A DNA stretch of 64,000 nucleotides, taken from Podarcis erhardii. Lineage: Eukaryota. Below, in pieces: positions 16,281 to 63,640 of this stretch (position 1 is its first letter; every line of letters starts with the position of its first letter). The notes below the pieces were generated by a model. That model saw nothing but the letters and a program-made list of their open reading frames with translations. It was not told the origin of the DNA and searched no databases. Both the position numbers and the translations under genes were made by a program. Where the stretch lies: the NCBI GenBank assembly GCA_964252035.1, contig OZ176204.1, one strand, 5' to 3'.

Positions 16281-16412
16281 CTAGACGATTCACTGGCCTG
16301 ATCCAGCAGAGCTCTTCTTACATTCTTAATCCAACCACGCCTCTTGCTCTGCTGGGTCAGAATCTCTGGCATCTTCCAGGTCAGCTGATGCATCTTGTTT
16401 CACTCCCACCAG

Positions 16413-17081
16413 GTGTGCCAGAAGTCTGGCGAGATCTCGCTACTGAAACAGCAGCTGAAGGAATCGCAGGCGGAGGTGGCTCAGCGGGGCAACGAGCTGG
16501 TGCTTCTGAGGGCCCAGCTGAGGGAAGCAAGGGCTGAGCTGCAGGCTGGTGAAGAGCAGGTGCTGGGCTTGCAGGAAGTGGCCCACACCAAGTCCTTGGA
16601 GCTGGAGGTGTGTGCCAACGAGCTGGCCAGGCGCAAGAGCGAGGCGGAGCTGCTGCGTGAGAAGGTGGGGCGGCTGGAGCATGAGTTGGAGGGACTGCGC
16701 AGTGTGGGCGGGGAGCTCTGCCCCCTGTTGGCCGAGTGCGACGAGGCCAAGGCCCAGCGCCAGGCAGCCGATACCCTGCAGGGCTTGCGCTCCCAGGCCG
16801 AACGGCTGCGCGCCGAGCTGCTGTGTGAGCGCCGGCGCGGCGAGGAGCAGCGGGAAGCTTTCCACGCCGAGCGTGTCACTTGGCAGGGGGAAAAGGACAG
16901 GGTCATCCGCTACCAGAAGCAGCTGCAGCACAACTATATCCAGATGTACCGGCACAACCGTGACTTGGAGAGCCAGCTGCGCCACCTTAGCCTTGAACTC
17001 GAGGCCCGGGACATGGAGGAGTACGAGATGCATGGGGGCGAAGGCATCTGCTTCGAGGAGATTGCCGCCACCGAGATCTGA
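16413..17081 (+). CDS. LZTS2: LZTS2 terminal coding exon (222 codons + TGA)
   Basis: AG at 16411-16412. Encodes VCQKSGEISLLKQQLKESQ...VIRYQKQLQHNYIQMY...EEIAATEI*, the Fez1/LZTS C-terminus. Confidence 0.95.
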   Translation: MCQKSGEISLLKQQLKESQAEVAQRGNELVLLRAQLREARAELQAGEEQVLGLQEVAHTKSLELEVCANELARRKSEAELLREKVGRLEHELEGLRSVGGELCPLLAECDEAKAQRQAADTLQGLRSQAERLRAELLCERRRGEEQREAFHAERVTWQGEKDRVIRYQKQLQHNYIQMYRHNRDLESQLRHLSLELEARDMEEYEMHGGEGICFEEIAATEI

Positions 17082-46864: not shown

Positions 46865-47057
46865 CTTCAAGGGGTGTATTGATGAGGATAACTCTTCCCA
46901 TGGGGGACGAGGTGCGGTAGTCCCGAAGGTTCCCATTCAGGAGCCGGTTCTGCCTGCTCAGCAGGAGGCGATTGGCAGTGCTGATGTCACTGCTGGAGCC
47001 CCGGGAGTGAGTCGGGTAAATGATTTCGCTCTGGAATGAATCAGGAGTGTATGCCAT
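46865..47057 (-). CDS. PDZD7: PDZD7 coding exon 1
   Basis: GCC ATG G start with an in-frame TAA 7 codons upstream. Encodes MAYTPD...[27 protein letters not shown]. Donor GTAC at 46864. Confidence 0.9.
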
Positions 47058-48198
47058 GGCAGGACAGGGTGCTGGTTATGCACAGAAGGACTCTCGCTGT
47101 CGGGTCTCTTGATGGGTTGGAGAAGCACACTGCGCTTGGGCCTGATTCCTTCAGGAAAGTTGGGCGAGTTTGTTACATTTTGGCCCCTTAGGTTGCTTCC
47201 CACCAGCGGAAACCGTTGCTGGACATGTTTCCATCAATCATAGTATTACCTCTCGTAGACTCATTTTGTTGTTGTCGATGGTGATGTTACCACTGAGGAT
47301 TGTCCTTAGGAAAATTCACCTATTTTTAAAATGCAGGATCCAATGAAAACATCTTGCCTCTCATGGGTTTAGATTCATGCTCTTTCTCTGTCTTCCAGAC
47401 ATGTATTCTGTAATAATAGTAGTAGTGATGGTAGTAGTAGTAATACTATCATTTTTTTACCCTAAAGCCTTTAGTCAAATTTAAGCCCTATGCACATTTA
47501 ACTGGAAGCAATTCCCATTGAATTAAACAGGACTTATTTCTATGTAAATAAGTTTAGGATGGCTGCATGGATTTCTTTTGAGTTTGTGGTGCAACAAGAA
47601 CATGTTTTATGGCACTCCAGAAGTCTCCTTGACAAGGGAGCATACCCTCAGTCAGTCCCTCTAGTACCTGAACTTTTGAGGACAGTCATAACAATATTTT
47701 TGCACTCACAAGGTTGAGAAAATGAAATTTAAAAAAATGAAATTTGTGGCTGGCAGAATTTTTACAAAAATATTACTACCTTTCACACAGTGCTCACTGC
47801 ATCCACTCTTTGAAGTTAGGTGTGTGTGTGTGTGGGGGGTTTCTAATGCTAATTCAACAGTTTCAGACATGAAGGCACTTCATATTTATTATCTAAGCAA
47901 TATGGTGGATGAAGACATTTTTACAGTAAGACATAAGCATGTTGCAAACATTGTTTGAAACATTTTCATTGTAGTGGGACTGTTGTGTTCCATGGAATTT
48001 ATGTAGAATAAAAAGCAGGAATAATATTGTTTGACTATGGCTGTCCTAGCTAAATGTAGAAAAATTAAAGCTGAAAAGAAAATGGATCAGATTCTTTTCC
48101 TTCCAGTGTCACAGTGTGATTCTATTTTAGCACTTTTAGTCTAAAAACATCTGTTGATTTCAGTGATGTATCTCCAGGTTTATGGCTTGGCAATTTAA

Positions 48199-50709: not shown

Positions 50710-50940
50710 TTATGCTGCTCTCTCCATGATGTCAGGGTGCATTGGTGGTCCTAAGGCTGGTGGTGTTTTGCAGGTCTTGCAGTAAACTTCAAAGAGACTA
50801 GCCACGGAGTGCATGCGGTAAAAGATGCCCAGTGGCAGGGAGATCTTGACCACAATGGCCCATAGTGTGAAGCCATAGAAAGACTGCTCAATCTGGCTCA
50901 CCAGGTGCGGGCGGGTCCCATAGGCATATAGAATCCACAC
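50710..50940 (-). CDS. Otopetrin-family proton channel, coding exon 6 (terminal)
   Basis: TAG acceptor at 50941-50943. Encodes VWILYAYGTRPHL...LPLGIFYRMHSVASLFEVYCK...ERAA*. FYRMH is the otopetrin signature. Confidence 0.9.
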   Translation of the reverse strand: MWILYAYGTRPHLVSQIEQSFYGFTLWAIVVKISLPLGIFYRMHSVASLFEVYCKTCKTPPALGPPMHPDIMERAA

Positions 50941-53811
50941 CTAGTCAAACAAAGGAAACAGGGAAAGGAATAAAACCAACTTCAAACTGTTGGCATAAGT
51001 AGCCATTATTTTGGGGCAGCAGCATCCTTTCATGGGAGGGATGGGGAGCATGTGGCCCTCCATATTCTGTTGTTATTGTTGAACTACAACTCCCATCAGC
51101 CCCATGCAGCATCTGGTGGACCACCACTTCCCCATCCTTCCTGAAATGTCTCCCATACTTATTTAGCATTTGACGTGCCTATAGAGCACATGGAAAAGCT
51201 ACGTTGTCTAGGATATACACCTGTTTTTCCACTGTCCCCTGTTCTGCTTTCTCAAGCACATGAACAACAATCAGAAGTTTTCATGTGCCGGATTAGAAGG
51301 TACTCTTTGAGCCAATCTACATGTTCAGAGAAAGAACATGGGACAGCACTCCATGACCTGTTGTAGGTCAGAATGTGAGAGGTGTGTCACACAGCTATAG
51401 CTTCCCTTCCCTTTGCATGAACATAAACAAGCAGCAGGTCAAGAGTAAAGCTTGGTTAGAGCCTTTCTTTCTAAAACGCCAGATTTTTTGTGGTGGCAGG
51501 AGGGGAGTGGAATTCAATTTTGAAGACAGGGATAAAGTGCAGTTCCACTGCCTGGATTCCAAATTGGTACAGTCCCAGGAAAGTTGTAGCATTTGTGTGC
51601 CTCCTGAACATGTAGATCGGCCATTATATAGATGGGGATGTTGTTCCACTTCACCCAACTTTCTTTGGCAAGAAGATATGCTTTCCATGCGGTGCCAGAA
51701 TTCTTCAGTTACGTAACTCAGGTCTTTGAAAATTTCTGTAATCATGACATTTTAAACAATGATGATGCGTTATGTTTTTAGATATGCGGGTTGAGTTCAC
51801 TTCTGGATGCGAACGGGGCTCTGGAACGGATCCCATTGGCATTCAGAGGTACCAGTGTACCTACATTGGAGCTATAGGCTGCATAGGAATCCTCATTTAT
51901 GTCACTGTTGTGCTGTTTCCTTGATACTGTTTGCAACAAAAAAGGGGTGGAGGATTTGCATAAAGGAGAAACTAACAAATATGTACATTTTTGGAATCAG
52001 GAGAAAAGGATTTGTGATAGCAAAGCTTGACTTGGTGTTGCAAATTACCAAATCCAGTTTGTTAGGTGACTAAAGTTACAAGCCATTTTATAAGTAACTA
52101 TGTTAACTTCCTGCTACTCCAACCATCAAATAGTATTGTGGCACCTTAAAGACAAACAAGTTTTATTATGGCAGAACCTTTATGAAGAAGAGTCCACTTC
52201 ATTAGATGCATCTGATGAAATGGTCTCTGGTCCACATCTTGAAGGTGCCATAAGAGTTTTTTGTTGATCTTGGTTCTAATCCACTACTGCCCTCTATGGG
52301 TCACATAGATTCTCTCACTTGGAACACGTTCAAGAACCGATTTTGCAAAGTTAGTTACAACAAATATTATTAGACAATCTTCTGTGTTTTCCATTTCAAA
52401 TTTGGCATGATTGGAGCTCTAACAAAATCATCAACATCATGGCAAGATTCATGCATGTAACATAATGTGTGGTGGTGGGGTTCTTCAATAAGAAATTTGG
52501 TAGAGCAAATTGAAATTTGGCATTGATGAGTAAAAGTCTTCATATCAGCCTGGAAGACCTAAGGCAAATAAGTTCAAAGAAGACTGGGAATTGTTTAGGA
52601 CATTTTTGAATGCAAAACAGGTTGCTATAAGAGGTACTCCCTTTCTTTTGCTCTGCAGTATCTATCTTGGAATTTCATGGTGTAAAATAGGTTTCTAATG
52701 CTGCTTCTTATTTAAAGACTACAATATTGAATTAAGGGTGAATTAACTTTTAATATCTTTTTATACCTTGTCATTAAACATTTATGACATATTTGTAATT
52801 TCTTTATATAACTGATGTGTTGATGATAGCTTTAATCAATTTAATTATTTTTTAGGAAATGGTGTCATTCTATGTTGGTGTATAATGGGGATCACCAACA
52901 TGGTGCTTGAAGGCACCAGTGTTCCCGCCAGTACCTACTGCGATGCCCACAAAAGGTCTCAGTAAACACTCTCTCAAAAATCCATAGTTCAAAGGAGACT
53001 GTTTGCTCTTCTTGCTCAGTTCCTGATTGCATTGGCTCAGCTTCTCCTACATTGAACACACTTACACACCACTCTTAAACATGCCCACAGTTCATTGGAT
53101 TCTTGAATTGGACACCCATCCACTCATCTATTCTGAACACAGGAGAGGTGCAAAGAGCTTCTCTCTGGGGCAGCCCTGGGGTGGATGATAAAAAGGCACC
53201 TGCATCAGCTACCTCATAGAAAAATGCTCCTTGCAGTTCTCGGTTCAGAAATCAACTGCTCTTGGTGAGTGAGCACAATGTTGCCTGATAAAATAACTTT
53301 GCCAGATACACCTGGTTGTAGGACAGTGTCCAATCCTGTAGGAACCTGTTTCCCATTCATGAGGTAGCTGGTGGTTGTGGACATGCCCTTACCATTTTGC
53401 GGTTGTGTCCCTCTTTCTGCTGTTTTAGATGTGGCAGCCATTTTGTGTCATGCCACATTCCCCATGGCAGGCATGTTGTGTTGCGCCACACCCTCAAGAT
53501 AGCCATTTCTTGACTGGTATCTGTGGCACTTTCTGGTATGTAATAACTTGGCCTGGGCCTAGTGAACACAAACCATTATTATTCCTACAGTGCACAAGTC
53601 TTCACTAGGCCTGTGCTAAGACCTGGCATGCTGACATAGATTGATCATATTATCAAAACTAAGGCCAACAGAGACTACTGCCTCAATTATGTCATGGACA
53701 GCCTGGTTCCTGGTTGCAAAGGGTCTCCCTAGAAGCCCTTTCCACAAAATCTCCCACCCACTGCAATTTTGGTGCTACCTTTAGATCTGTCTTAAACCAA
53801 ACCCAACTTAC

Positions 53812-54731
53812 CGATATGTTGTAGAAGATGAGGAGAATTGAGATGTTTTGTAGGACCTTCCTTCTGATACTTTGTTTTTTAGGTTCTCTCTCAATGTGTG
53901 AAATCTGGAAGAGGGATGGGTCATCACCATGATCTGACAAGTGCATGGGCAGTTGATTTTCCAAACTGGCCATGATGTTGGTCAGTGTATGGGTTTTGGA
54001 GTAAGGTCTATTGCCGTCCTGTTCTGCAGGACCTCTGGAAATGGAAAAGATCCAGCTGGCGGCAGCAGAATTGCTGTTGTCTTGGCCATCTGGCTCTTGA
54101 GGGAGGCTTGAGTACAAAGCTTCAGTAATGAAGAGATTCTGTCCCAATATCTGGATGGTCTTGCAGAGGGAGAAGCAGAAGTCTAGGAGGTGGAGGCCAC
54201 CATTGGTATGAAGAAATAAGATGGCAACCAAAGAGAAGATGGATACCATGAGGGGACCACAGGAGCTGCCGAGAAGCAAGGTGACATCTAAGTTTCTTAC
54301 CACGCTTTTGTCAGAAGGGAGAGCTGCAGATTTTTTCTTCATTCTGTAGGTGGCAATGCCAATCAAAGTTGCCAGGAACATGGCAGACAAGAGCACAGAG
54401 TTGAAGATGTAGTATGTCCGTAGGGCTTCAGGAATGGTGTGGGGAGACTTGGCAAGCACTCCAAAAGAGATCATCACCCCAAATGTTGCTGAAATGGCCA
54501 AGGCCCCCAGCACTAGCCCCACAAAAGCCCCACTGAGATGGAAGTGTGCCTTGTGAGTAAGCTGGGGCTTTTGGCTGGGGCTTTGCCGCCCCGTGTTCTT
54601 CCAGATGATGTACAGCATTGTAGAAGAGAAGAGACTGAACTCAATATTGAAGGGATGCAGGTAGGCGGCACCTTCTGAAAAGATGTGGCAAAGGCTGGTG
54701 GTACAGATGCAGCTGTTGGTGTGGGAACCAC
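53812..54731 (-). CDS. Otopetrin-family proton channel, coding exon 5 (920 nt)
   Basis: CAG at 54732-54734. Encodes CICTTSLCHIFSEGAAYLHPFNIEFSLFSSTMLYIIWKNTG...LDVTLL...GQNLFITEAL...RRKVLQNISILLIFYNIS. Donor GTAAG; multiple hydrophobic TM segments. Confidence 0.92.
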
Positions 54732-55296
54732 CTGTAGGAAGAATAGGATGCTTGTGCTAGAAGAGGGATATATGTTTAGCAGAGGAACAACAGAAAAGGT
54801 TGTCTGGCAACTTCTAACTGGAAAAGAGGACAATTCTATCTGCTTAGGTCACACCCACAGCAAATATTTAAAGCATTCTTACACCACTTTAACACTCATG
54901 GAGAATCCTAGGAACTGTGGTTTGTTAAGGGTGCTGGGAATTGTAGCTTGGTGAGGTCAGCACTACAATTCCCAGGATTCTTTGGGGGAAGCCTGACTCT
55001 TAAAATGGTATTAAGAGCAAGCACTTTTTTGTGTGGCTGTGCCCCGTGTGCAGTTGAGAAACCGCACACAGTTCTTTTCCACCGGCTGATGTAAGACCAG
55101 CACAAACAGTTGGGCCTGGTGAGCACTCAATGTTTCCATCCCCATTAGTTATAATCCGTGGGTTGCCATCTGATTTTATTCTGCTCCAAATTTGATTTTA
55201 AGCTGTATTTTAATTGATTGTTTGATTTATGTTTTTAATGTAACATACTTTGATGGTAGTCACCCTGAGCCTGGTCCTGGCTGGGGAGGGTGGGGT

Positions 55297-55298
<2 letters not shown>

Positions 55299-55388
<90 letters not shown>
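55299..55388. repeat. (AAT)n microsatellite forming the tail of an L2-like 3' end (~55190-55388)
   Basis: About 29 AAT units with one interruption, preceded by gtcaccctgagc...gggtggggta. Confidence 0.9.
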
Positions 55389-55933
55389 TTTCTGCTTTCT
55401 TCATCCAATCATGACAACTTTATACCAAAACACGCTGTGGGAAGGGGAGCTGCAGGCTAACTGTATCTGTAAATAAATTCTTACCACTGAATTTGGAGGA
55501 TGGGTGCTTCAGAGGAATGGCATGAGATGGAACATCATGTATAGGAAGCACAGTGATCGTAGGGTGGATAGTTAAAGCATGGATGGGAAATGGCTCAATC
55601 CAGGGGGAAACTCAAGTGAAGTGGAGTGTTAGGGCTTTGCAGCATTGGGGAAGGGATGCAAAGGAGAAATATGGGGTGCGGCAGCTGCAGAGCTGCATTC
55701 TACAGGGGGCCTCTCCTTATGTTATTGGAGCCAAATATTTCCTTATATGCTGGGCTGAGTCTCAGCAGTTTCCCAGTCCCAGCCCCATGAGGGGCTCAAG
55801 AGTAAATGGCAAAGTAAGGGGGCACATCTGCTGGAAAGAAGGCCAGAGAACGGATGTGAATACTAAGAGAACATACATTACTGGGCTACCATATAAGTAT
55901 AGCAAGACAGCAAGTAAACAGAAGTCCCTTGGA

Positions 55934-56108
55934 CAGGGTTGCCATACGTCCAGAATTTCCTGGACTTACTCGGAATACCACATTCCTCAGCAGAGTCTGG
56001 GTGGAAATAGGCCGAATGTCTGGGAAAATCCAGATGTATGGCAGCCTATGTCAGCAGCTTTACAACTTTGCTGTCCGGATTTTCCCTGTTTGAAATATGG
56101 CAACCCTA
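55934..56108. mobile_element. hAT-type MITE, 175 bp
   Basis: TIRs CAGGGTTGCCATA / TATGGCAACCCTA. 8-bp flanks cccttgga / tccttgga match at 7 of 8 positions. Confidence 0.8.
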
Positions 56109-56238
56109 TCCTTGGATTTGCACCATGCCTTTGGTCACTTTGAAAGACTTAGTTCCTAAGTTTGTCCCTGATCAAGCCAAGCCATTTGTAGACCTCTCTT
56201 TGAGAGCTCACTCCCCAGATGAGAAGGACAGTTTGTAC

Positions 56239-56366
56239 CATGGGGGGCCTGTGAAGTCTCTCCCTTGTGAGCATCATAAAATTCTTCCAGCTGCTTCATG
56301 GACTCATCCAGCACCACACTCATCCACAGGAGCACGTTGGTGGCTAGAGTGTGCATCAGCCCAAAC
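56239..56366 (-). CDS. Otopetrin-family proton channel, coding exon 4
   Basis: Encodes RFGLMHTLATNVLLWMSVVLDESMKQL..., matching the otopetrin RFGxxHxxxTNxLLW motif. TAG / GTAC; phase 2 in, 1 out. Confidence 0.92.
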
Positions 56367-56380
56367 CTAGAAGTCACAAG

Positions 56381-56431
56381 GAGGAAGGAAGGAAGGAAGG
56401 AAGGAAGGAAGGAAGGAAGGAAGGAAGGAAG
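56381..56431. repeat. (GGAA)n microsatellite beside the otopetrin exon 4 acceptor
   Basis: Direct reading. Confidence 0.95.
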
Positions 56432-56704
56432 GGGATAAATGCAAAATCTCTGCACTTCACCCTTCCCTACTCAATTTGGTTCAAAGTTAGATAGAGGCTC
56501 CCTGGCCCCAAGCCAAACATTCCTCCCAGCCATGATTAGCATCTTTGTAGTCATTTCATGCACTGGCATTCTTACGAGGCTGCCAAAAACCTGACTCGCT
56601 TTTCCCTGCATGGTTGCCTCATCTGCAACATTCAGATTCTTCCAGGCGTCCTCATCCTTGCCAGAGGCAGAATTTTCATATTACAGCTACCCAATGCAAA
56701 CCCT

Positions 56705-56870
56705 CCTGTGGTGCAATGGGTCAGCACATCTGCTTGTTAATTGAAAGGTGGGTGGTTCAAGCCCTCTAAGGGACAGCTGCAGGCAAAATATTCCTACATT
56801 GCAGGGTGTTAGACTAGATGACCCTTGGGGTCCCTTCTAACTCTATGTCTCTGATTCTCTGTGATTCTAA
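56705..56870 (+). mobile_element. Degenerate tRNA-headed SINE with CR1-like tail
   Basis: gtggtgcaatgggtcagcac...ggtggttcaagccc head; ttcctacattgcagggtgttagactagatgaccctt...ctctgattct tail. Confidence 0.6.
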
Positions 56871-57248
56871 TTGCATCCAGTGCAGTGCTAAGTGCATGCC
56901 CTAGCAGTACAATGATTACTGTTTGTGCAACAGGGCTTTCCTTCCCTGCCTGTGCACCCCTTAAATATGTTCTGGACTTTCCTTTACCTCTGGAGCACAT
57001 TTAGGGAAAGGGCACAGGGTGGGGGTGAAGAGGAGGAGAGAGAGTCCTGCAGTACAAACAGCAGTCTTCGTGCTGATGGGGTGCTTTCATTTATTGCATT
57101 TTTATCCCACCTTTGAAGAAAGATGGATGAAATAATAAAGAATCCCATAGGTTAGAAAAGACTGTACAAGTTCAAACCTTGGACCAGTGTGTATGCCTGG
57201 TAGCTGTATGGGTTGCTGATTTTACATAGCTCAAGAGAATACACCTAC

Positions 57249-57307
57249 CTATTTAGATGCTGATGTTCCTGGATGCAAACTTTAGCATTAAACAACAGCA
57301 CTGAGAC
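57249..57307 (-). CDS. Otopetrin-family proton channel, coding exon 3 (59 nt)
   Basis: Encodes VSVLLFNAKVCIQEHQHLNR, similar to the otopetrin VYFLWxHAKDxIQ segment. CAG / GTAGG. Confidence 0.88.
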
Positions 57308-57490
57308 CTGTAAGAAGGGAAGGAAGGTGCCAGGGCGGGGAAAGAGACAGAAGACCACATCACCATTTGCCACTAATAGTATAAACCAGTCTTCCCCAAC
57401 CTGGTGCTCTCTGTGTTTATTGGACTCCCAACTCCCATTAGCCCCATCCAGGAAGGTCAATGGCCAGGGAGATTGGAAGTTGTAGTCCAT

Positions 57491-57825
57491 GCGGGTTAAA
57501 CCACAGAGCCTAGGACTTGCCGATCAGAAGGTCAGCGGTTCGAATCCCCGCGATGGGGTGAGCTCCCGTTGCTCGGTCCCAGCTCCTGCCAACCTAGCAG
57601 TTCAGAAGCATGTCAAAGTGCAAGTAGATAAATAGGTACCGCTCCGGTGGGAAGGTAAATGGCGTTTCCGTGCGCTGCTCTGGTTCGCCAGAAGCGGCTT
57701 AGTCACGCTGGCCACATGACCTGGAAGCTGTACGCCGGCTTCCTTGGCCAATAAAGCGAGATGAGTGCCGCAACCCCAGAGGAGGCCATGACTGGACCTA
57801 ACGGTCAGGTGTCCCTTTACCTTTA
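57491..57825 (+). mobile_element. Sauria SINE, near full length
   Basis: gggttaaaccacagagcctaggacttgccgatcagaaggtcagcggttcgaatccc...gtgcaagtagataaataggtacc...cctttaccttta, the squamate Sauria SINE as I recall it. CpG-rich, so probably young. Confidence 0.9.
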
Positions 57826-58090
57826 GCTTGACTATGGTTGCTGAAAGCCCACTAGGTTCAGGAAGCTTGGCACAAACTGTTCCTCCAGTACTCTGAAATT
57901 TTGCCTTATGCACTGCCTCTTTAACAGTAGTGAACATTTTGCAAGGAGAAAGAACACAGTGGAGAGAAGCAGAAAGGGCTGGGATCCTAGATGTATGGCA
58001 GAAAAGGAAGGAGAATAGCTAACTCCTCTAAGGCTGATCCTGCCTGTGCTGTGGCATCCCCACCAAATATCTGACCACATTAGACCTCAC

Positions 58091-58227
58091 CTGGATGATG
58101 GTAAAAACAGCCTGCACGACAGGGAAGGTGGTGATGAGCATGGAGGCGCAGTGCTGCAGCTCGTAGCAGTACCCCAGGGAGAGGCAGTCCAGAACCAAGG
58201 TGGCCAGTGCAAAGAGAGAGAGACCGC
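58091..58227 (-). CDS. Otopetrin-family proton channel, coding exon 2
   Basis: Encodes GGLSLFALATLVLDCLSLGYCYELQHCASMLITTFPVVQAVFTIIQ. CAG / GTGAG. Confidence 0.9.
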
Positions 58228-59157
58228 CTGCCATGACAAGACAGCATGGTCACCACAAATGCGGCACAGAAAGCAGGCACGCTGATAATTTATTCAGGAA
58301 GCAGAAGGGGGCAGGAGGTCCATTCATATTAAGCCAAGACTGTGGGACCAGACAGAGCAAGGGGAGCAGGCTCCCTGCTGATGAAGGAAAGCATCTGCAT
58401 CCTGACAGTTCCACCCTGTCAGTTCCAAAGTGAGTCCCCAGTGCCTTTCTCCACTGACCCATAAGACTACAGATTAAAAAACAACAACATGAGCTGCATG
58501 GAAGGGGAATTGTGAAACAAGACTGAGAAATCTGTGGTTTCATGGAAGTCCCCACCCTCGCCAATCATTGCGATGCTAATAGGGGTAGGCAGCTGATGCG
58601 AGTGGTTGTTTGTGAGAACAAATTGGCTGATATAACCAGTGCTTTCCCACCCTAAAACAGTGTTTAGGGGTACTCTCATTTTGACTCAAGAAAACCACCA
58701 TTTTATAGTTCAAATCAGAGAAAATAAATACGGTAAATGGACAAAGTACAGAGATTCACAAAATGTTTAGGGGTATGCGTATCCCTGCGTCCTCCCAGAA
58801 AAAAAAGCACTGGATAGAACAATAGGTTCTCTGTCTCTCTGAAATGAAATGAAGTGCAAGTCAGGCTAATAGCAGAGTGGGCTGAAATTCTGAAATATCT
58901 TCTGGTTGGCTTGGATCTGTCAGACACCAGCAGATCCAAGAACCACATTTTCTCTGCAGGATTCAACTGGGATGATGTCTTGTGTGTCACAACTCCTCTA
59001 ATTCACTTGTCTGAGTCCCCTTTTAGTAGAAATGCCAAAACTTTGGAAGGGCAAGGAGGTTTCATTGCTAGTGATGGTCTTCGTTGTTTGAAGGATTGCA
59101 CAATTTGCTTGGGCATGAGCATATTGCAGTGGATCCTATCAGTGTCAACATCTCTAC

Positions 59158-59407
59158 CTTTTAGCCAGCTTGCTCCTGCCTGGTGATCCTGGTGCCGTTT
59201 CAGCTGCTTGTTGCGGGAAGAGTGGCAGCCAAACCAGAGCATCCAGATGCAGGAAGAGATCATGAGCGCCTCCAGGAAAGCATGGACGTTGCGGCTCTGT
59301 GAGCTGTGCTGGTGCATCTCAGCAAGGAGCACCGCACTGCCCACAAACGTCAGAAGCACCAAATAGAGGAGGGAAAGCAGGGAACTGGAGAGCATGGTAG
59401 ATGCCAT
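59158..59407 (-). CDS. Otopetrin-family proton channel, coding exon 1 (start codon inferred)
   Basis: GCC ATG G at 59407. Encodes MASTMLSSSLLSLLY...FLEALMISSCIWMLWF...QDHQAGASWLK, matching the otopetrin DxHAGxxWL motif. Donor GTAGA; candidate acceptor CTGCAG ending at 59436. The 3' boundary is firm, the start is less so. Confidence 0.82.
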
Positions 59408-59687
59408 GGCTAAGCAGGGTCTTTTTGCTGGGTATCTGCAGTGCAGCAAGGTATAGCTCAGCATTACAGGGAATATAACTGTAGACAGAAATAGACTCAA
59501 GAGAGAAAGGTCAGGAACACACATCCTATGCGCCATGCTATATAACTGTGTGGATCTTATAACACAGAGACATGCACACAGCTCAGTACGAGGGCTGTAA
59601 TAGTGCATGCATTCCCTTCAGCCTGCCTTCAGTATGAGTCCAAATGACTAAATTTTTGAACTGGCAGTGCTTTTCAACAGTTTATTC

Positions 59688-60447: not shown

Positions 60448-60488
<41 letters not shown>

Positions 60489-60600: not shown

Positions 60601-62639
60601 ACATACCTAATGAAATCAAACCCCAAACCTATAAACATCCCTTTCCAATGTCTACTCATAGTTACGCTTGTATTCTCTGCAAGATGTATGAGAGATATAT
60701 GGACACAACAGGAAATGTTTTTGGACGGTATGGGGTCAGACTTAGGGGGCTAATAAATAAACTCTTCTCTTGTTAGGCTTTCCATGAACCCCATCTGCCT
60801 AGCGTACAGCCCTTCATATACTGTAACGCAATTGCAAAATCAAGCTTTGGACCAAAAACACAAAGTGAGGAATGTGAGGCTTGCTAACACGGGCTGGATC
60901 AGAGGAGTCAGAAGATTGATATTGTGTCCTGCAACACAGGTGCTTTTTTTGGAAGCAATGTGCCTCCCTCTAGGTTGGTGCACCGGACCCCTTTTCTTGG
61001 ATAGTGGGAACCCTAACACCACATTTTGCAGCTGAAATAATGGGGTGATCCTGCATCACCAAGAACATTTCTTTTCACTCACCCTCCTGAGATAGTTGAA
61101 ATTACTAAACAGACTTTCCTAGGGGGTAAAAAAGAAGGCAATATCATGAGTCTTTGCACATGAGCACGGAATCCACCAATTTTTGAAATGGGAAAATGAT
61201 ACCCCAAGCACTCCCTCCAGAATTCTTAGGGATGGAGCCCTTCCCCTTGGAACAGTGGAATCCTTGTGTACATGCTCATTATAAGATCTAGATTCCAAAG
61301 CACACCTTATTCTGCTCTAGGCCCTTTCCCTTGCAAGATCCTACTCACCTGGTTGTGTCATGATGCTGAGAGTCGTTCTCTCACATGCCTACCACAGATT
61401 TGGGATTTATCTCAAGGAACCAGCAAGGCAAGGGTATTAATATACCAGGAACGATGGCCCCAGGGGGCAACTTGGGCCCACCCCTACCAGCATAATCAGG
61501 GGCAGGGAGATCAGGATTTCCATATCCTTTCTCCTCCACTCCCTGCTCTCATCCTCGCCTGGTGTTTAAATGTCTCTTTGTAAGCTAATGGGATTTGAAT
61601 AGAAAGGGCTGGGGCTTTAATAATGTATACCATCTAGCAATGGATGGGAAAACAAGTACATTTCTTTTACATTAACTGTTGTGAGCAGAACAAACAAGTA
61701 AGCAATTTCCATGAGGTGGTTATATCCCACCAAAGAAACATTGGAATGTTTCCTTTTGAAATATATCCAAATAGTAGACATACATGTTTTAAATCATTTT
61801 ATTTTTATTTAAAATAATATTTCCAAAAATATCTCATGGTCATCAGTACATGTTTCATGATTGTATTCTAAATCACACTAGAACATAAATACCAACAAAG
61901 CAATAAATCACATTGTTTTTGGTCTATTTCAGCTGAAAAAGCTATCCATGCATAACAATGTAACAATTCATAGATTACCACTAAAGTAAAGGGTACTACA
62001 AGTATTAAGCATTTCTACCATGATATTGTGATTAATTCGGCTAAAGATATTTTCACATTGAGATGTCATGAATTCATACACGTTTGTCACACAGCATCTA
62101 AGAAATGTTCTGGCATTTGTTACAAATTCAGTAAACAGCAGCCCATTCCTGACATCTGATCTCAGATGGGACCCTATGCCATATCCCACTCCTTATAAGA
62201 ATGTCTCCTTGGCCATCCTGGCTGGGGCTGATAGGAGTTGTAGTCCAAAACGTCAACGCTTCTGCTTCTTCTGCCCTAATTTATGCTTCTCATGCGAGGC
62301 CATTCCATTCCACTGCATATGCAATAATATATTTTATCCATGGACTCTAGAGACTCAGCTAGCTCCTCTCGCAGGTCCTGTTACAGGTCACCTGTATCCT
62401 GACTGCCAGCTTACTCTGAGCAAGCTGTTAAGAAACAAAGCTGACCCCCCCCCCACTCCGCCGCCCCTTCCAATCAAATTCTGCTGCGGGGGGTGGGTCG
62501 TACAATTGCCTGTTTTAAAGAGCAGCGAAGGAAGGAAATACTCTGCACATGTTCAAGGGCACTTTCCCCTAGCATCTCGCCCATTCCAGGGCCGGAGACG
62601 GGTTACTGGAGAAGCAGGCCCGCAGGGCTGCACCTGGGT

Positions 62640-63640
62640 CCTGCTACAGGTTTCATACTTAAAACATGGACAGCTCCGGCCGATTGCCAGTGAGTGAGCG
62701 GGGCAGGATCGGACCGCCAAAGCCTGTGTCAAGCGGCACGTAGTGCGCTCTGAAGGGGAGGCGCCCACCTTGCCTGCCGGGCGAGGAGCAAGGCAGGGAA
62801 AAGGCCGGCAGCCAGAGCAGCTGGCGCCGCCGCCGCCTCCTAATCCGATCCCCGCGAGGGCTGCCAGGGACAAGCCTCTTCCCTCCGCCCCTTCCAGGCA
62901 GCCCCACCCCGGCCAGTCTCCCGCCCGCTCCGCTTCCCGGCAGGCTCCGAGGAACTGGCTAGGCCGTAGCCCTGCCTCTTGGCCGGCTCTCCCTCGCCGC
63001 TCATTGGCTCTCGCCTCGCCAGGGGGGCCGCGACATTCGGGCGCCGTGACAAGCCAAGGAAGGGGCCGGCCTCGGGAAGCAGCCCAGCGCCGCCGTGTCA
63101 CAGCCGCCGGGCGACAGGGTTGCAGCCGCCACCGCCACTGCCGCCGCTCGGAGGAACAAGTGAGTTTCCTCTCGCAGGGATCGCGACCCAGCCCGGCCCT
63201 CCCCTCGCGGGGCGGGGACGCCTCCCGGCTCCATCCTCCGCTCTGCCTCGGGGCTTCTGGCGCCAGGATCTCCCTCGCCTTCTCCTCGCTATGCAGCCTC
63301 TCCCTTTCTCCCTCCACAGCCTGCGGATTACTCATCACACGTTCCCATCTCTCTCTCTCTCTCTCTCTCCTCCCCACCCCATGCCGCCCACTCCGCGCGC
63401 GCTTTCCCTTCCTCCTCCTCCTCCTCCACCCGTTTTTATGAGTCACTCCGGGGTTTTGGGTGGGGGCCCATCCGCGTCACGAGCTCATGCACGCGCCGGC
63501 GGGTGACTCCCTGCGCGCACCGCGTGCCCAGGGGCTGCTGAGCATCACGCCGGGATCTGGGGAGTTGGCTGGGAGGGCGGCAGGCAGAGGATGCGAGCGA
63601 CAGGTAGCGGCACATAGCGGGATACGCAGAGCAGCCCTCT
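62640..63640. promoter_or_regulatory. CpG-island promoter, probably bidirectional
   Basis: Very high GC and CpG density compared with the rest of the window. GC boxes (ccgccc at 62885 and about 62921) and an inverted CCAAT box (ATTGG at 63003-63007). Confidence 0.85.
63030..63159 (+). other. Probable non-coding first exon of the next + strand gene (SFXN3 by synteny only); 5' end approximate
   Basis: Consensus donor AA/GTGAGT at 63160 inside the CpG island, downstream of the CCAAT box. No coding evidence in the window. Confidence 0.55.

What the first reader, a model, noticed from the sequence alone, without database searches (positions are those of the whole stretch)
50710..59407. Intact extra otopetrin (OTOP) proton-channel paralogue between PDZD7 and the putative SFXN3 promoter
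Seen in sequence: six GT-AG exons (250+137+59+128+920+231 = 1725 nt) splice in consistent phase to a 574-aa multi-TM protein with no frameshift or internal stop. It carries otopetrin motifs (DHQAGASWL, RFGLMHTLATNVLLW, CICxxxLC, PFNIE, QNLFI, FYRMH). Established knowledge: mammals have OTOP1 (4p16) and OTOP2/OTOP3 (17q25), and I know of no otopetrin in the human LZTS2-PDZD7-SFXN3 block. Inference: this is a fourth vertebrate otopetrin lineage retained in squamates and lost in mammals. MLSS before TM1, RRKVLQNI and ASLFEVYCK resemble recalled OTOP1 most. An OTOP1 ohnologue is plausible because 4p16 and 10q24 belong to related paralogons. A divergent proton channel could serve sour/ammonium taste, vomeronasal or vestibular function.
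Basis: partly seen in the sequence, partly recalled or inferred. Interest (0 to 1): 0.88.

Follow-up and report, generated by a model that had tools for sequence, protein, structure and literature searches.

The report
Fourth vertebrate otopetrin proton-channel gene
This lizard DNA holds an intact, conserved gene for a fourth kind of otopetrin proton channel that sits between SFXN3 and PDZD7 from chimaeras to lizards, was not found in mammals or birds, and so far appears in databases only under borrowed names such as "OTOP1-like".

Summary
Six GT-AG exons on the minus strand (250+137+59+128+920+231 nt) give an uninterrupted 574-aa protein. It matches Pfam Otopetrin and is 98.4-99.1% identical to RefSeq models from lacertid lizards called "OTOP1-like" or "OTOP2-like".

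The core interpretation holds. In a mixture-model ML tree the protein falls in an 18-sequence clade (100/100 support) spanning chimaera, bichir, sturgeon, paddlefish, lungfish, amphibians, turtles and squamates. The clade's branching follows the species tree. It lies outside OTOP1+(OTOP2,OTOP3). AU tests reject joining it to OTOP1 or to OTOP2/3.

The order SFXN / OTOP / PDZD7 is the same in lizard, turtle, sturgeon and elephant shark. Squamates also keep OTOP1, OTOP2 and OTOP3, so this is not a relocated copy.

Pairwise dN/dS is 0.09-0.17. The proton-relay residues (TM6 Glu222, TM9 Asp340, TM12 His542) are kept. A predicted 12-helix model matches solved OTOP1/2/3 structures (TM-score 0.82-0.90).

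No bird, crocodilian, mammal or teleost member was found, and no paper describing this lineage. Expression, tissue and channel activity are untested.

The scan has one other note on this same stretch (s1-214998).

The parts
59158..59407 (-). Exon 1 (250 nt): ATG, TM1-TM2 and the DHQAGASWL motif
   Evidence: ATG at 59407, donor GT at 59157-59156. The same 250-nt exon is present in four other squamates. The frame stays open upstream to 59608, so the true start is uncertain.
58091..58227 (-). Exon 2 (137 nt), TM3-TM4
   Evidence: AG/GT boundaries, phase 1. A 137-nt exon is conserved in squamates and turtle.
57249..57307 (-). Exon 3 (59 nt)
   Evidence: A 59-nt exon is conserved in squamates and turtle.
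56239..56366 (-). Exon 4 (128 nt), TM5 with RFGLMHTLATNVLLW
   Evidence: Pfam Otopetrin E 9.9e-8. The (AAGG)14 array at 56378-56432 reads (CCTT)n on the coding strand and lies just upstream of the acceptor.
53812..54731 (-). Exon 5 (920 nt): TM6-TM10 and the disordered TM10-TM11 loop; holds Pro218, Glu222 and Asp340
   Evidence: Pfam Otopetrin E 4.9e-25. Relay residues were mapped on mouse OTOP2 and are invariant in a 36-sequence alignment.
50710..50940 (-). Exon 6 (231 nt incl. stop): end of TM11 and TM12 with Arg508, FYRMH (His542), and the C-terminal tail
   Evidence: Pfam Otopetrin E 2.6e-9. The length of this exon varies among squamates, 174-255 nt.
46865..47057 (-). First coding exon of the downstream PDZ-domain gene (PDZD7), same strand as the otopetrin gene
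   Evidence: Read. It corresponds to the start of a 969-aa three-PDZ protein called 3.6 kb downstream of the otopetrin gene in P. raffonei. Boundaries are approximate.
62500..63605 (+). CpG island with the first exon of the divergently transcribed SFXN gene (SFXN3 by position)
   Evidence: GC 0.65-0.69 and CpG o/e 0.67-0.88. The P. raffonei SFXN gene model starts at the matching position. The exon limits (about 63487-63603) are inferred from coordinate mapping only.

Best explanation
Window 50710-59407 (minus strand) holds the orthologue, in a lacertid lizard, of a fourth ancient jawed-vertebrate otopetrin gene, here called OTOP-X. It arose before the split of cartilaginous and bony vertebrates. 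It has kept its place between SFXN3 and PDZD7 since then and evolves under purifying selection. It was not found in mammals, birds, crocodilians, teleosts or gars. The protein is a 12-helix, two-barrel otopetrin. By inference it forms a dimer and conducts protons through the Glu(TM6)-His(TM12) relay between the two barrels, with the TM9 Asp tuning the His, as worked out for mouse OTOP2 and C. elegans OTOP8. Shown here: gene structure, family membership, fold, conserved relay residues, separate clade, synteny and constraint. Inferred only: proton conductance, gating properties, tissue and physiological role.
For: Gene model and Pfam match. An exhaustive HMMER scan of 1.84 billion cluster representatives shows a close group (44-82% identity), then a drop to 40% or less for every other otopetrin. 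Members of the group come from anurans, caecilians, salamanders, turtles, squamates, sturgeons and paddlefish, Polypterus, Erpetoichthys, Protopterus and Callorhinchus. In the ML tree (IQ-TREE, LG+C20 PMSF, 69 sequences) OTOP-X is monophyletic at 100/100 and follows the species tree. OTOP1+(OTOP2,OTOP3) excludes it at 99/89. AU tests reject X+OTOP1 (p 0.0008; p 0.0049) and X+(OTOP2,OTOP3) (p 0.0022). The order SFXN(-)/OTOP-X(+)/PDZ protein(+) is found in Podarcis, Malaclemys, Callorhinchus, Acipenser and Varanus. The PDZ neighbour alone falls within the 10-kb flank in Pelodytes, Rhineura and Eublepharis. Squamates keep the three named genes: Varanus OTOP1 lies beside TMEM128/LYAR, Rhineura OTOP3 beside HID1, Podarcis muralis has OTOP3, and Varanus, Anolis, Pogona, Elgaria and snakes have OTOP2. 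Pairwise dN/dS is 0.085-0.17 (NG86) and 0.13-0.24 (YN00). The window differs from P. raffonei at 17 synonymous and 5 non-synonymous codons. Exon sizes 250/137/59/128/920 are conserved, and intron positions parallel those of OTOP3. Mouse OTOP2 residues P246, E250, D369, R517 and H551 align to P218, E222, D340, R508 and H542. P, E, D and H are invariant across 36 otopetrins. The AlphaFold2 model has pLDDT 75, pTM 0.71 and 12 long helices. It matches mOTOP2, zebrafish OTOP1 and chicken OTOP3 at TM-score 0.82-0.90 by target.
Against: There is no expression, protein or electrophysiology evidence for any member of this clade. The inferred losses rest on predicted-protein databases, not on the genomes of birds or mammals, so pseudogene remnants or unannotated copies were not excluded. 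The position of cyclostome otopetrins is unsettled. The tree joins them to OTOP-X at 91/88, without full support, yet the lamprey gene lies beside a D1-like dopamine receptor, which recalls the OTOP1-DRD5 linkage. The age of the split relative to the cyclostome divergence and the genome duplications is therefore open. The tree root depends on long invertebrate branches (warnings). The N-terminus is uncertain. A language-model feature search ranked OTOP1 clusters nearest.
Confidence: 0.85

Rival explanations
1. It is the OTOP1, OTOP2 or OTOP3 orthologue moved to a new place, or a specific sister (ohnologue) of OTOP1.
For: RefSeq names it OTOP1-like or OTOP2-like, and UniProt/Ensembl entries say Otopetrin 1 or 3. 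A feature-based atlas search puts OTOP1 clusters nearest. From general knowledge, 4p16 and 10q24 are often placed in one paralogy group; this was not tested here.
Against: The clade has 100/100 support outside OTOP1+(OTOP2,OTOP3). AU tests reject both joins. Squamates and Callorhinchus hold the named genes as well. Identity to OTOP1 and to OTOP2 is about equal. The RefSeq name for the same P. muralis gene changed from OTOP1-like to OTOP2-like between versions.
Confidence: 0.04
2. It is a recent duplicate specific to lizards or squamates.
Against: Orthologues with the same neighbours occur in turtle, frog, sturgeon and elephant shark. The clade's internal branching mirrors the vertebrate species tree.
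Confidence: 0.01
3. It is an open but functionless relic: a decaying or unexpressed gene whose intact frame is chance or annotation bias.
For: No expression data could be consulted. The 5' end is not a CpG island (o/e about 0.27). The start codon differs between gene models.
Against: dN/dS is 0.09-0.17 over squamate and turtle comparisons with dS up to about 0.7 or more. The frame is intact in more than 40 species. Relay residues are invariant. Exon structure is conserved.
Confidence: 0.03
4. OTOP-X is not a gnathostome-only paralogue. It is the direct counterpart of the cyclostome otopetrins, so the split from OTOP1/2/3 predates the lamprey-jawed vertebrate divergence (first genome duplication). 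This bears on the dating only and is compatible with the main explanation.
For: Lamprey and hagfish sequences join OTOP-X at 91/88 in the mixture-model tree.
Against: Support is below the starred level and the cyclostome branches are long. The lamprey gene's neighbour is a D1-like dopamine receptor, as at the OTOP1-DRD5 locus, not SFXN or PDZD7 (OTOP1-DRD5 linkage from PMC3038909).
Confidence: 0.4

Closest known systems
OTOP2 (mouse OTOP2, PDB 8UG6/8UG7)
   Same: Best sequence match among solved structures (E 2.3e-87). Same 12-helix two-barrel fold (TM-score 0.82-0.88 by target). The same relay residues are present: P246/E250/D369/R517/H551 correspond to P218/E222/D340/R508/H542. The six-exon layout is shared with OTOP2/3-type genes.
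   Different: Only about 32-36% identical. It sits on a different branch of the tree. The locus differs: SFXN3-PDZD7 rather than USH1G-OTOP2-OTOP3-HID1. Tyr245 of mOTOP2, which hydrogen-bonds the exposed Glu, is His217 here. Whether it is open at neutral pH like OTOP2 is unknown.
OTOP1 (zebrafish OTOP1, PDB 6NF4; sour-taste and otoconia channel)
   Same: Same family and fold (E 1.7e-77; TM-score 0.87-0.90 by target). A language-model feature search ranks OTOP1 clusters nearest.
   Different: About 30-35% identity. A clade with OTOP1 is rejected. It is not at the TMEM128-OTOP1-DRD5 locus, which squamates keep separately.
OTOP3 (chicken OTOP3 6NF6, Xenopus OTOP3 6O84)
   Same: Same family, fold and exon pattern: 411/141/66/129/936/168 nt in Rhineura OTOP3 against 250/137/59/128/920/231 nt here.
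   Different: Lowest identity of the three, 29-32%. Podarcis has its own OTOP3, P0233.
Amphibian otopetrin expansion (Hurle et al. 2011, PMC3038909)
   Same: That paper documents extra otopetrin genes outside mammals and raises the idea that some were lost in the mammalian line.
   Different: The eight Xenopus tropicalis genes it lists lie at the OTOP1 and USH1G-OTOP2-OTOP3 loci and fall into three subfamilies. Anolis was examined only at those two loci. No gene at SFXN3-PDZD7 is mentioned.

Membership tests
Otopetrin family (Pfam PF03189) | Significant match to the Otopetrin profile above the curated cut-off | tested here: met
   Exon 5 scores 88.8 bits, exon 6 36.9 bits and exon 4 31.7 bits, against a cut-off of 27.8. 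PF03189 is precomputed for all clade members.
Otopetrin family (Pfam PF03189) | Twelve transmembrane helices forming two homologous six-helix barrels | tested here: met
   The AlphaFold2 model has 12 long helices and a disordered TM10-TM11 loop. Foldseek TM-score by target is 0.82-0.90 to mouse OTOP2, zebrafish OTOP1 and chicken OTOP3. The next fold scores below 0.25. This is a predicted model, not an experimental one.
Otopetrin family (Pfam PF03189) | Conserved proton-relay residues: TM6 Glu, TM12 His, TM9 Asp (PMC11343839) | tested here: met
   E222, H542 and D340 align to mOTOP2 E250, H551 and D369 and are invariant in 36 otopetrins.
Otopetrin family (Pfam PF03189) | Proton-selective current; homodimer | not testable with these tools
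   Needs patch clamp or pH imaging and biochemistry.
OTOP1 subfamily | Nests with OTOP1 orthologues in a tree | tested here: not met
   It lies outside OTOP1+(OTOP2,OTOP3) at 99/89. The constrained tree is rejected, p-AU 0.0008 and 0.0049.
OTOP1 subfamily | Locus flanked by TMEM128 and DRD5 (PMC3038909) | tested here: not met
   The flanks here are SFXN and PDZD7. Varanus OTOP1 lies beside TMEM128/LYAR elsewhere.
OTOP2/OTOP3 subfamilies | Nests with OTOP2 or OTOP3; tandem pair at the USH1G...HID1 locus | tested here: not met
   OTOP2+OTOP3 is supported at 100/99 without X. X+(OTOP2,OTOP3) is rejected at p-AU 0.0022. Rhineura OTOP3 lies beside HID1 on another chromosome record than its OTOP-X.
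OTOP-X (proposed fourth gnathostome subfamily) | Monophyly with species-tree-like branching, plus position between SFXN3 and PDZD7 | tested here: met
   Support is 100/100 for 18 sequences. Shared neighbours are seen in eight species from chimaera to lizards.

The most novel reading that the evidence does not exclude
OTOP-X is a functionally distinct fourth vertebrate proton channel. Its gating or physiological role differs from OTOP1-3, for example control of pH where non-calcite or mixed calcium-carbonate otoconia and endolymphatic-sac deposits form, or acid/ammonium sensing in aquatic and amphibious vertebrates. On this reading its repeated loss (mammals, archosaurs, neopterygian fishes) tracks a change in that physiology. 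The standard statement that vertebrates have three otopetrins would need revising. The ancestral jawed vertebrate would have had four, one of them linked to the Usher-network gene PDZD7 much as OTOP2 is linked to USH1G.
Probability: 0.2. Interest if true: 0.8.

Novelty: new member of a known kind. Interest (0 to 1): 0.6.

Why it matters
Papers on otopetrins, including very recent ones, state that the vertebrate family has three members (for example PMC3038909 and the abstract of PMC13579931 seen). This gene shows a fourth, equally old member that mammals, birds and teleosts, the usual model animals, appear to lack. That may explain why it has only automatic, inconsistent names.

It gives channel biophysicists a natural, strongly constrained variant about 30-36% identical to the three studied subtypes. 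The proton relay is intact but the linkers and the residue beside the relay Glu differ. That is useful for dissecting pH gating.

It gives evolutionary biologists a clean case of an ancient paralogue with fixed synteny and several independent losses. The pairing OTOP-X/PDZD7 alongside OTOP2/USH1G, both neighbours being genes of the Usher hair-cell network, is worth a look.

The finding is not a new kind of molecule, and the gene models already exist in public annotation. The advance is in classification and in pointing to an unstudied channel.

Tried and rejected
1. Literature. Searches for OTOP4, otopetrin 4, fourth or four otopetrin, otop1l/otop2l, otopetrin with PDZD7, and OTOP1-3 with ohnolog, phylogeny or gene loss found nothing on this lineage. 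'otop2l' turned out to be a sea-urchin gene. The library lacks most subscription journals, so absence is not proof.

2. The Xenopus 'Nlo' gene mentioned in PMC3038909 was considered as a possible earlier sighting. That paper places it with OTOP3, so it was dropped.

3. I looked for OTOP2 within 10 kb upstream of Rhineura OTOP3 and found none. Squamate OTOP2 was then found by protein search instead.

4. treekit's second constraint test returned the same likelihood difference as the first. I did not rely on it and repeated both constraints by hand in IQ-TREE.

5. The short Logan-assembly proteins P0001, P0006 and P0200 were considered as possible transcript evidence. P0200's match begins exactly at the exon 4/5 boundary and the rest does not align, so it looks like genomic read-through and gives no evidence of expression.

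6. ARAGORN found no tRNA in the SINE-like element of intron 2.

7. Large ORFs elsewhere in the window gave no Pfam hits except LZTS2.

8. The whole spliced protein could not be passed to the search tools by reference. Exon 5 and the 99.1%-identical P0174 were used in its place.

Full report
**Observation**

Every internal junction is AG|exon|GT. The joined sequence is 1725 nt and in frame.

Pfam's Otopetrin profile (PF03189) matches exons 5, 6 and 4 separately, all above the curated cut-off. The model is 99.1% identical over all 574 residues to the RefSeq protein 'proton channel OTOP1-like' of Podarcis raffonei. Its locus has the same six exons.

The window is 93-97% identical in DNA to that locus. 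The protein is 98.4-99.1% identical to those of P. muralis, P. lilfordi, Lacerta agilis and Zootoca and exactly equal to none of them. The source is therefore a lacertid lizard.

**Surroundings**

A Fez1-domain exon (LZTS2) lies at 16395-17078 on the plus strand. About 3.65 kb downstream of the otopetrin stop, on the same strand, is the first coding exon of a three-PDZ protein of about 950-990 aa (PDZD7 by domain content and position). About 4.1 kb upstream, on the opposite strand, an SFXN gene starts inside a CpG island at 62500-63500. The 5' end of the otopetrin gene itself is CpG-poor.

**A separate clade**

An exhaustive HMMER scan of 1.84 billion cluster representatives with exon 5 shows a small close group (44-82% identity). 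Identity then drops sharply to 40% or less for all other otopetrins.

Expanding the close group from a frog member lists:
- 17 anuran genera, three caecilians and two salamanders;
- five turtle and 14 squamate genera;
- sturgeons and paddlefish, Polypterus, Erpetoichthys, Protopterus and Callorhinchus.

Their names alternate between OTOP1-like, OTOP2-like and Otopetrin 3. No bird, crocodilian, mammal, teleost, gar, coelacanth or tuatara appears. Equivalent searches with OTOP3 and OTOP2 return birds, crocodilians and mammals in large numbers.

A preliminary FastTree was followed by a careful IQ-TREE analysis (LG+C20+F+G4 PMSF, 69 sequences, invertebrate outgroups). Both give the same picture:
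- The group (OTOP-X, 18 sequences) is monophyletic at 100/100.
- Its internal order is chimaera, then (bichir, (paddlefish, sturgeon)), then lungfish, then amphibians, then (turtles, squamates).
- OTOP1+(OTOP2,OTOP3) forms its own clade at 99/89.

Forcing OTOP-X together with OTOP1 costs 26.5 log-likelihood units (p-AU 0.0008). Under LG+F+G4, run by hand, X+OTOP1 gives p-AU 0.0049 and X+(OTOP2,OTOP3) gives 0.0022.

**Synteny**

The arrangement SFXN(-) / OTOP-X(+) / PDZ protein(+) is seen in Podarcis raffonei, Malaclemys terrapin, Callorhinchus milii, Acipenser ruthenus and Varanus komodoensis. In Pelodytes, Rhineura and Eublepharis the PDZ gene lies downstream, and SFXN is not within the 10-kb flank.

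The canonical loci persist in squamates:
- Varanus OTOP1 lies beside TMEM128/LYAR.
- Rhineura OTOP3 lies beside HID1.
- Podarcis muralis has OTOP3.
- OTOP2 is annotated in Varanus, Anolis sagrei, Pogona, Elgaria, Tiliqua, Sceloporus, geckos and snakes.
- Callorhinchus has OTOP2 as well as OTOP-X.

**Constraint**

I threaded the annotated proteins back on their loci to recover coding sequences. Pairwise dN/dS among the window, P. raffonei, Rhineura, Varanus, Eublepharis and Malaclemys is 0.085-0.17 by Nei-Gojobori and 0.13-0.24 by YN00. The window and P. raffonei differ at 17 synonymous and 5 non-synonymous codons.

Exon sizes 250/137/59/128/920 are identical in five squamates. The turtle has the same inner exons and a longer 5' part. 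The layout parallels OTOP3: 411/141/66/129/936/168 nt in Rhineura. This fits duplication of genomic DNA rather than retrocopying.

**Mechanism**

Gan et al. 2024 (PMC11343839, read) assign proton conduction to a buried TM6 glutamate and a TM12 histidine at the interface of the two barrels. A TM9 aspartate pairs with the histidine. A proline one turn above the glutamate and an arginine stabilise the exposed state. In mouse OTOP2 these residues are E250, H551, D369, P246 and R517.

In the HMMER alignment to chain 8UG6_A they correspond to E222, H542, D340, P218 and R508 of the lizard protein. E, H, D and P are invariant in a 36-sequence alignment of all four lineages plus cyclostomes. Tyr245 of mOTOP2 is His217 here.

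An AlphaFold2 model built on that alignment has mean pLDDT 75 and pTM 0.71. It shows twelve long helices and a disordered TM10-TM11 loop at residues 404-476. Foldseek matches it to mOTOP2, zebrafish OTOP1 and chicken OTOP3 at TM-score 0.82-0.90 by target and to nothing else meaningful.

I therefore expect a dimeric proton channel that uses the Glu/His relay. Its conductance, pH dependence and tissue of action are inference only.

**Open points**

1. Start codon. The frame stays open upstream to ATG 59608. The 15 codons before the chosen ATG resemble the snake and anole sequences. P. muralis models of 597 and 617 aa use upstream starts, one of which is not a Met in this window.

2. Cyclostomes. 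Lamprey and hagfish genes join OTOP-X at 91/88. However, the lamprey gene lies beside a D1-like dopamine receptor (E about 1e-178 to D1/D5 receptors), as OTOP1 does beside DRD5 (PMC3038909). The timing relative to the genome duplications is unresolved.

3. Paralogon. The tree says OTOP-X is not the specific sister of OTOP1.

4. Losses. These are inferred from protein databases only.

5. Nesting. Whether the gene lies inside PDZD7 intron 1 (scan note s1-214998) cannot be decided without transcripts. The CDS-based annotation places the PDZD7 start downstream of it, and a possible acceptor precedes that ATG.

**Novelty**

Hurle et al. 2011 describe three subfamilies. They examined Anolis at two loci only and list eight Xenopus genes, all at the OTOP1 and USH1G-OTOP2-OTOP3 loci. 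Eight full-text searches found no description of a fourth vertebrate lineage. The library is incomplete, and orthology databases could not be consulted.

The gene models themselves are public. What seems new is recognising them as a distinct, ancient, syntenically fixed subfamily. I rate it a new member of a known kind, with moderate to high interest for the otopetrin field.

Noticed in passing
window 16395-17078 (+): An ORF with a full Fez1 domain (Pfam PF06818, E 2e-70): the main coding exon of LZTS2. It confirms the LZTS2-PDZD7-SFXN3 block.
   Followed up: partly
window 46865-47160 (-): The first coding exon of PDZD7 is preceded, about 90 nt before the ATG, by a pyrimidine-rich stretch ending in AG. 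PDZD7 may therefore have an upstream non-coding exon, which leaves open whether the otopetrin gene lies within PDZD7 intron 1.
   Followed up: partly
window 59408-59608 (-): The otopetrin frame stays open for 67 codons upstream of the chosen ATG. The nearest 15 codons (CRYPAKRPCLA) are similar in snakes and anole. Other lacertid gene models start further upstream (597 and 617 aa).
   Followed up: partly
window 56378-56432: An (AAGG)14 microsatellite, reading (CCTT)n on the coding strand, lies directly upstream of the exon 4 acceptor, where the polypyrimidine tract would be. Length changes there might affect splicing.
   Followed up: no
window 55299-55388 and 60448-60488: A (TAA)30 array in intron 4 and a (TAC)14 array upstream of the gene.
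   Followed up: no
window about 57490-57830: An interspersed-repeat-like element in intron 2 with a GGTTCGAATCC box typical of tRNA-derived SINEs. ARAGORN calls no tRNA there.
   Followed up: partly
L011:30086-31543 (+), sea lamprey: The lamprey otopetrin gene is followed 7 kb downstream by an intronless D1-like dopamine receptor gene. This is the same linkage as OTOP1-DRD5 in jawed vertebrates, although the tree places the lamprey protein nearer OTOP-X.
   Followed up: partly
L002:10001-11452, Malaclemys terrapin: The turtle orthologue has an extra 40-nt first exon and a 378-nt second exon. They encode a cytoplasmic N-terminus about 55 aa longer, which the squamate models lack. Frogs also have the long N-terminus.
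   Followed up: no
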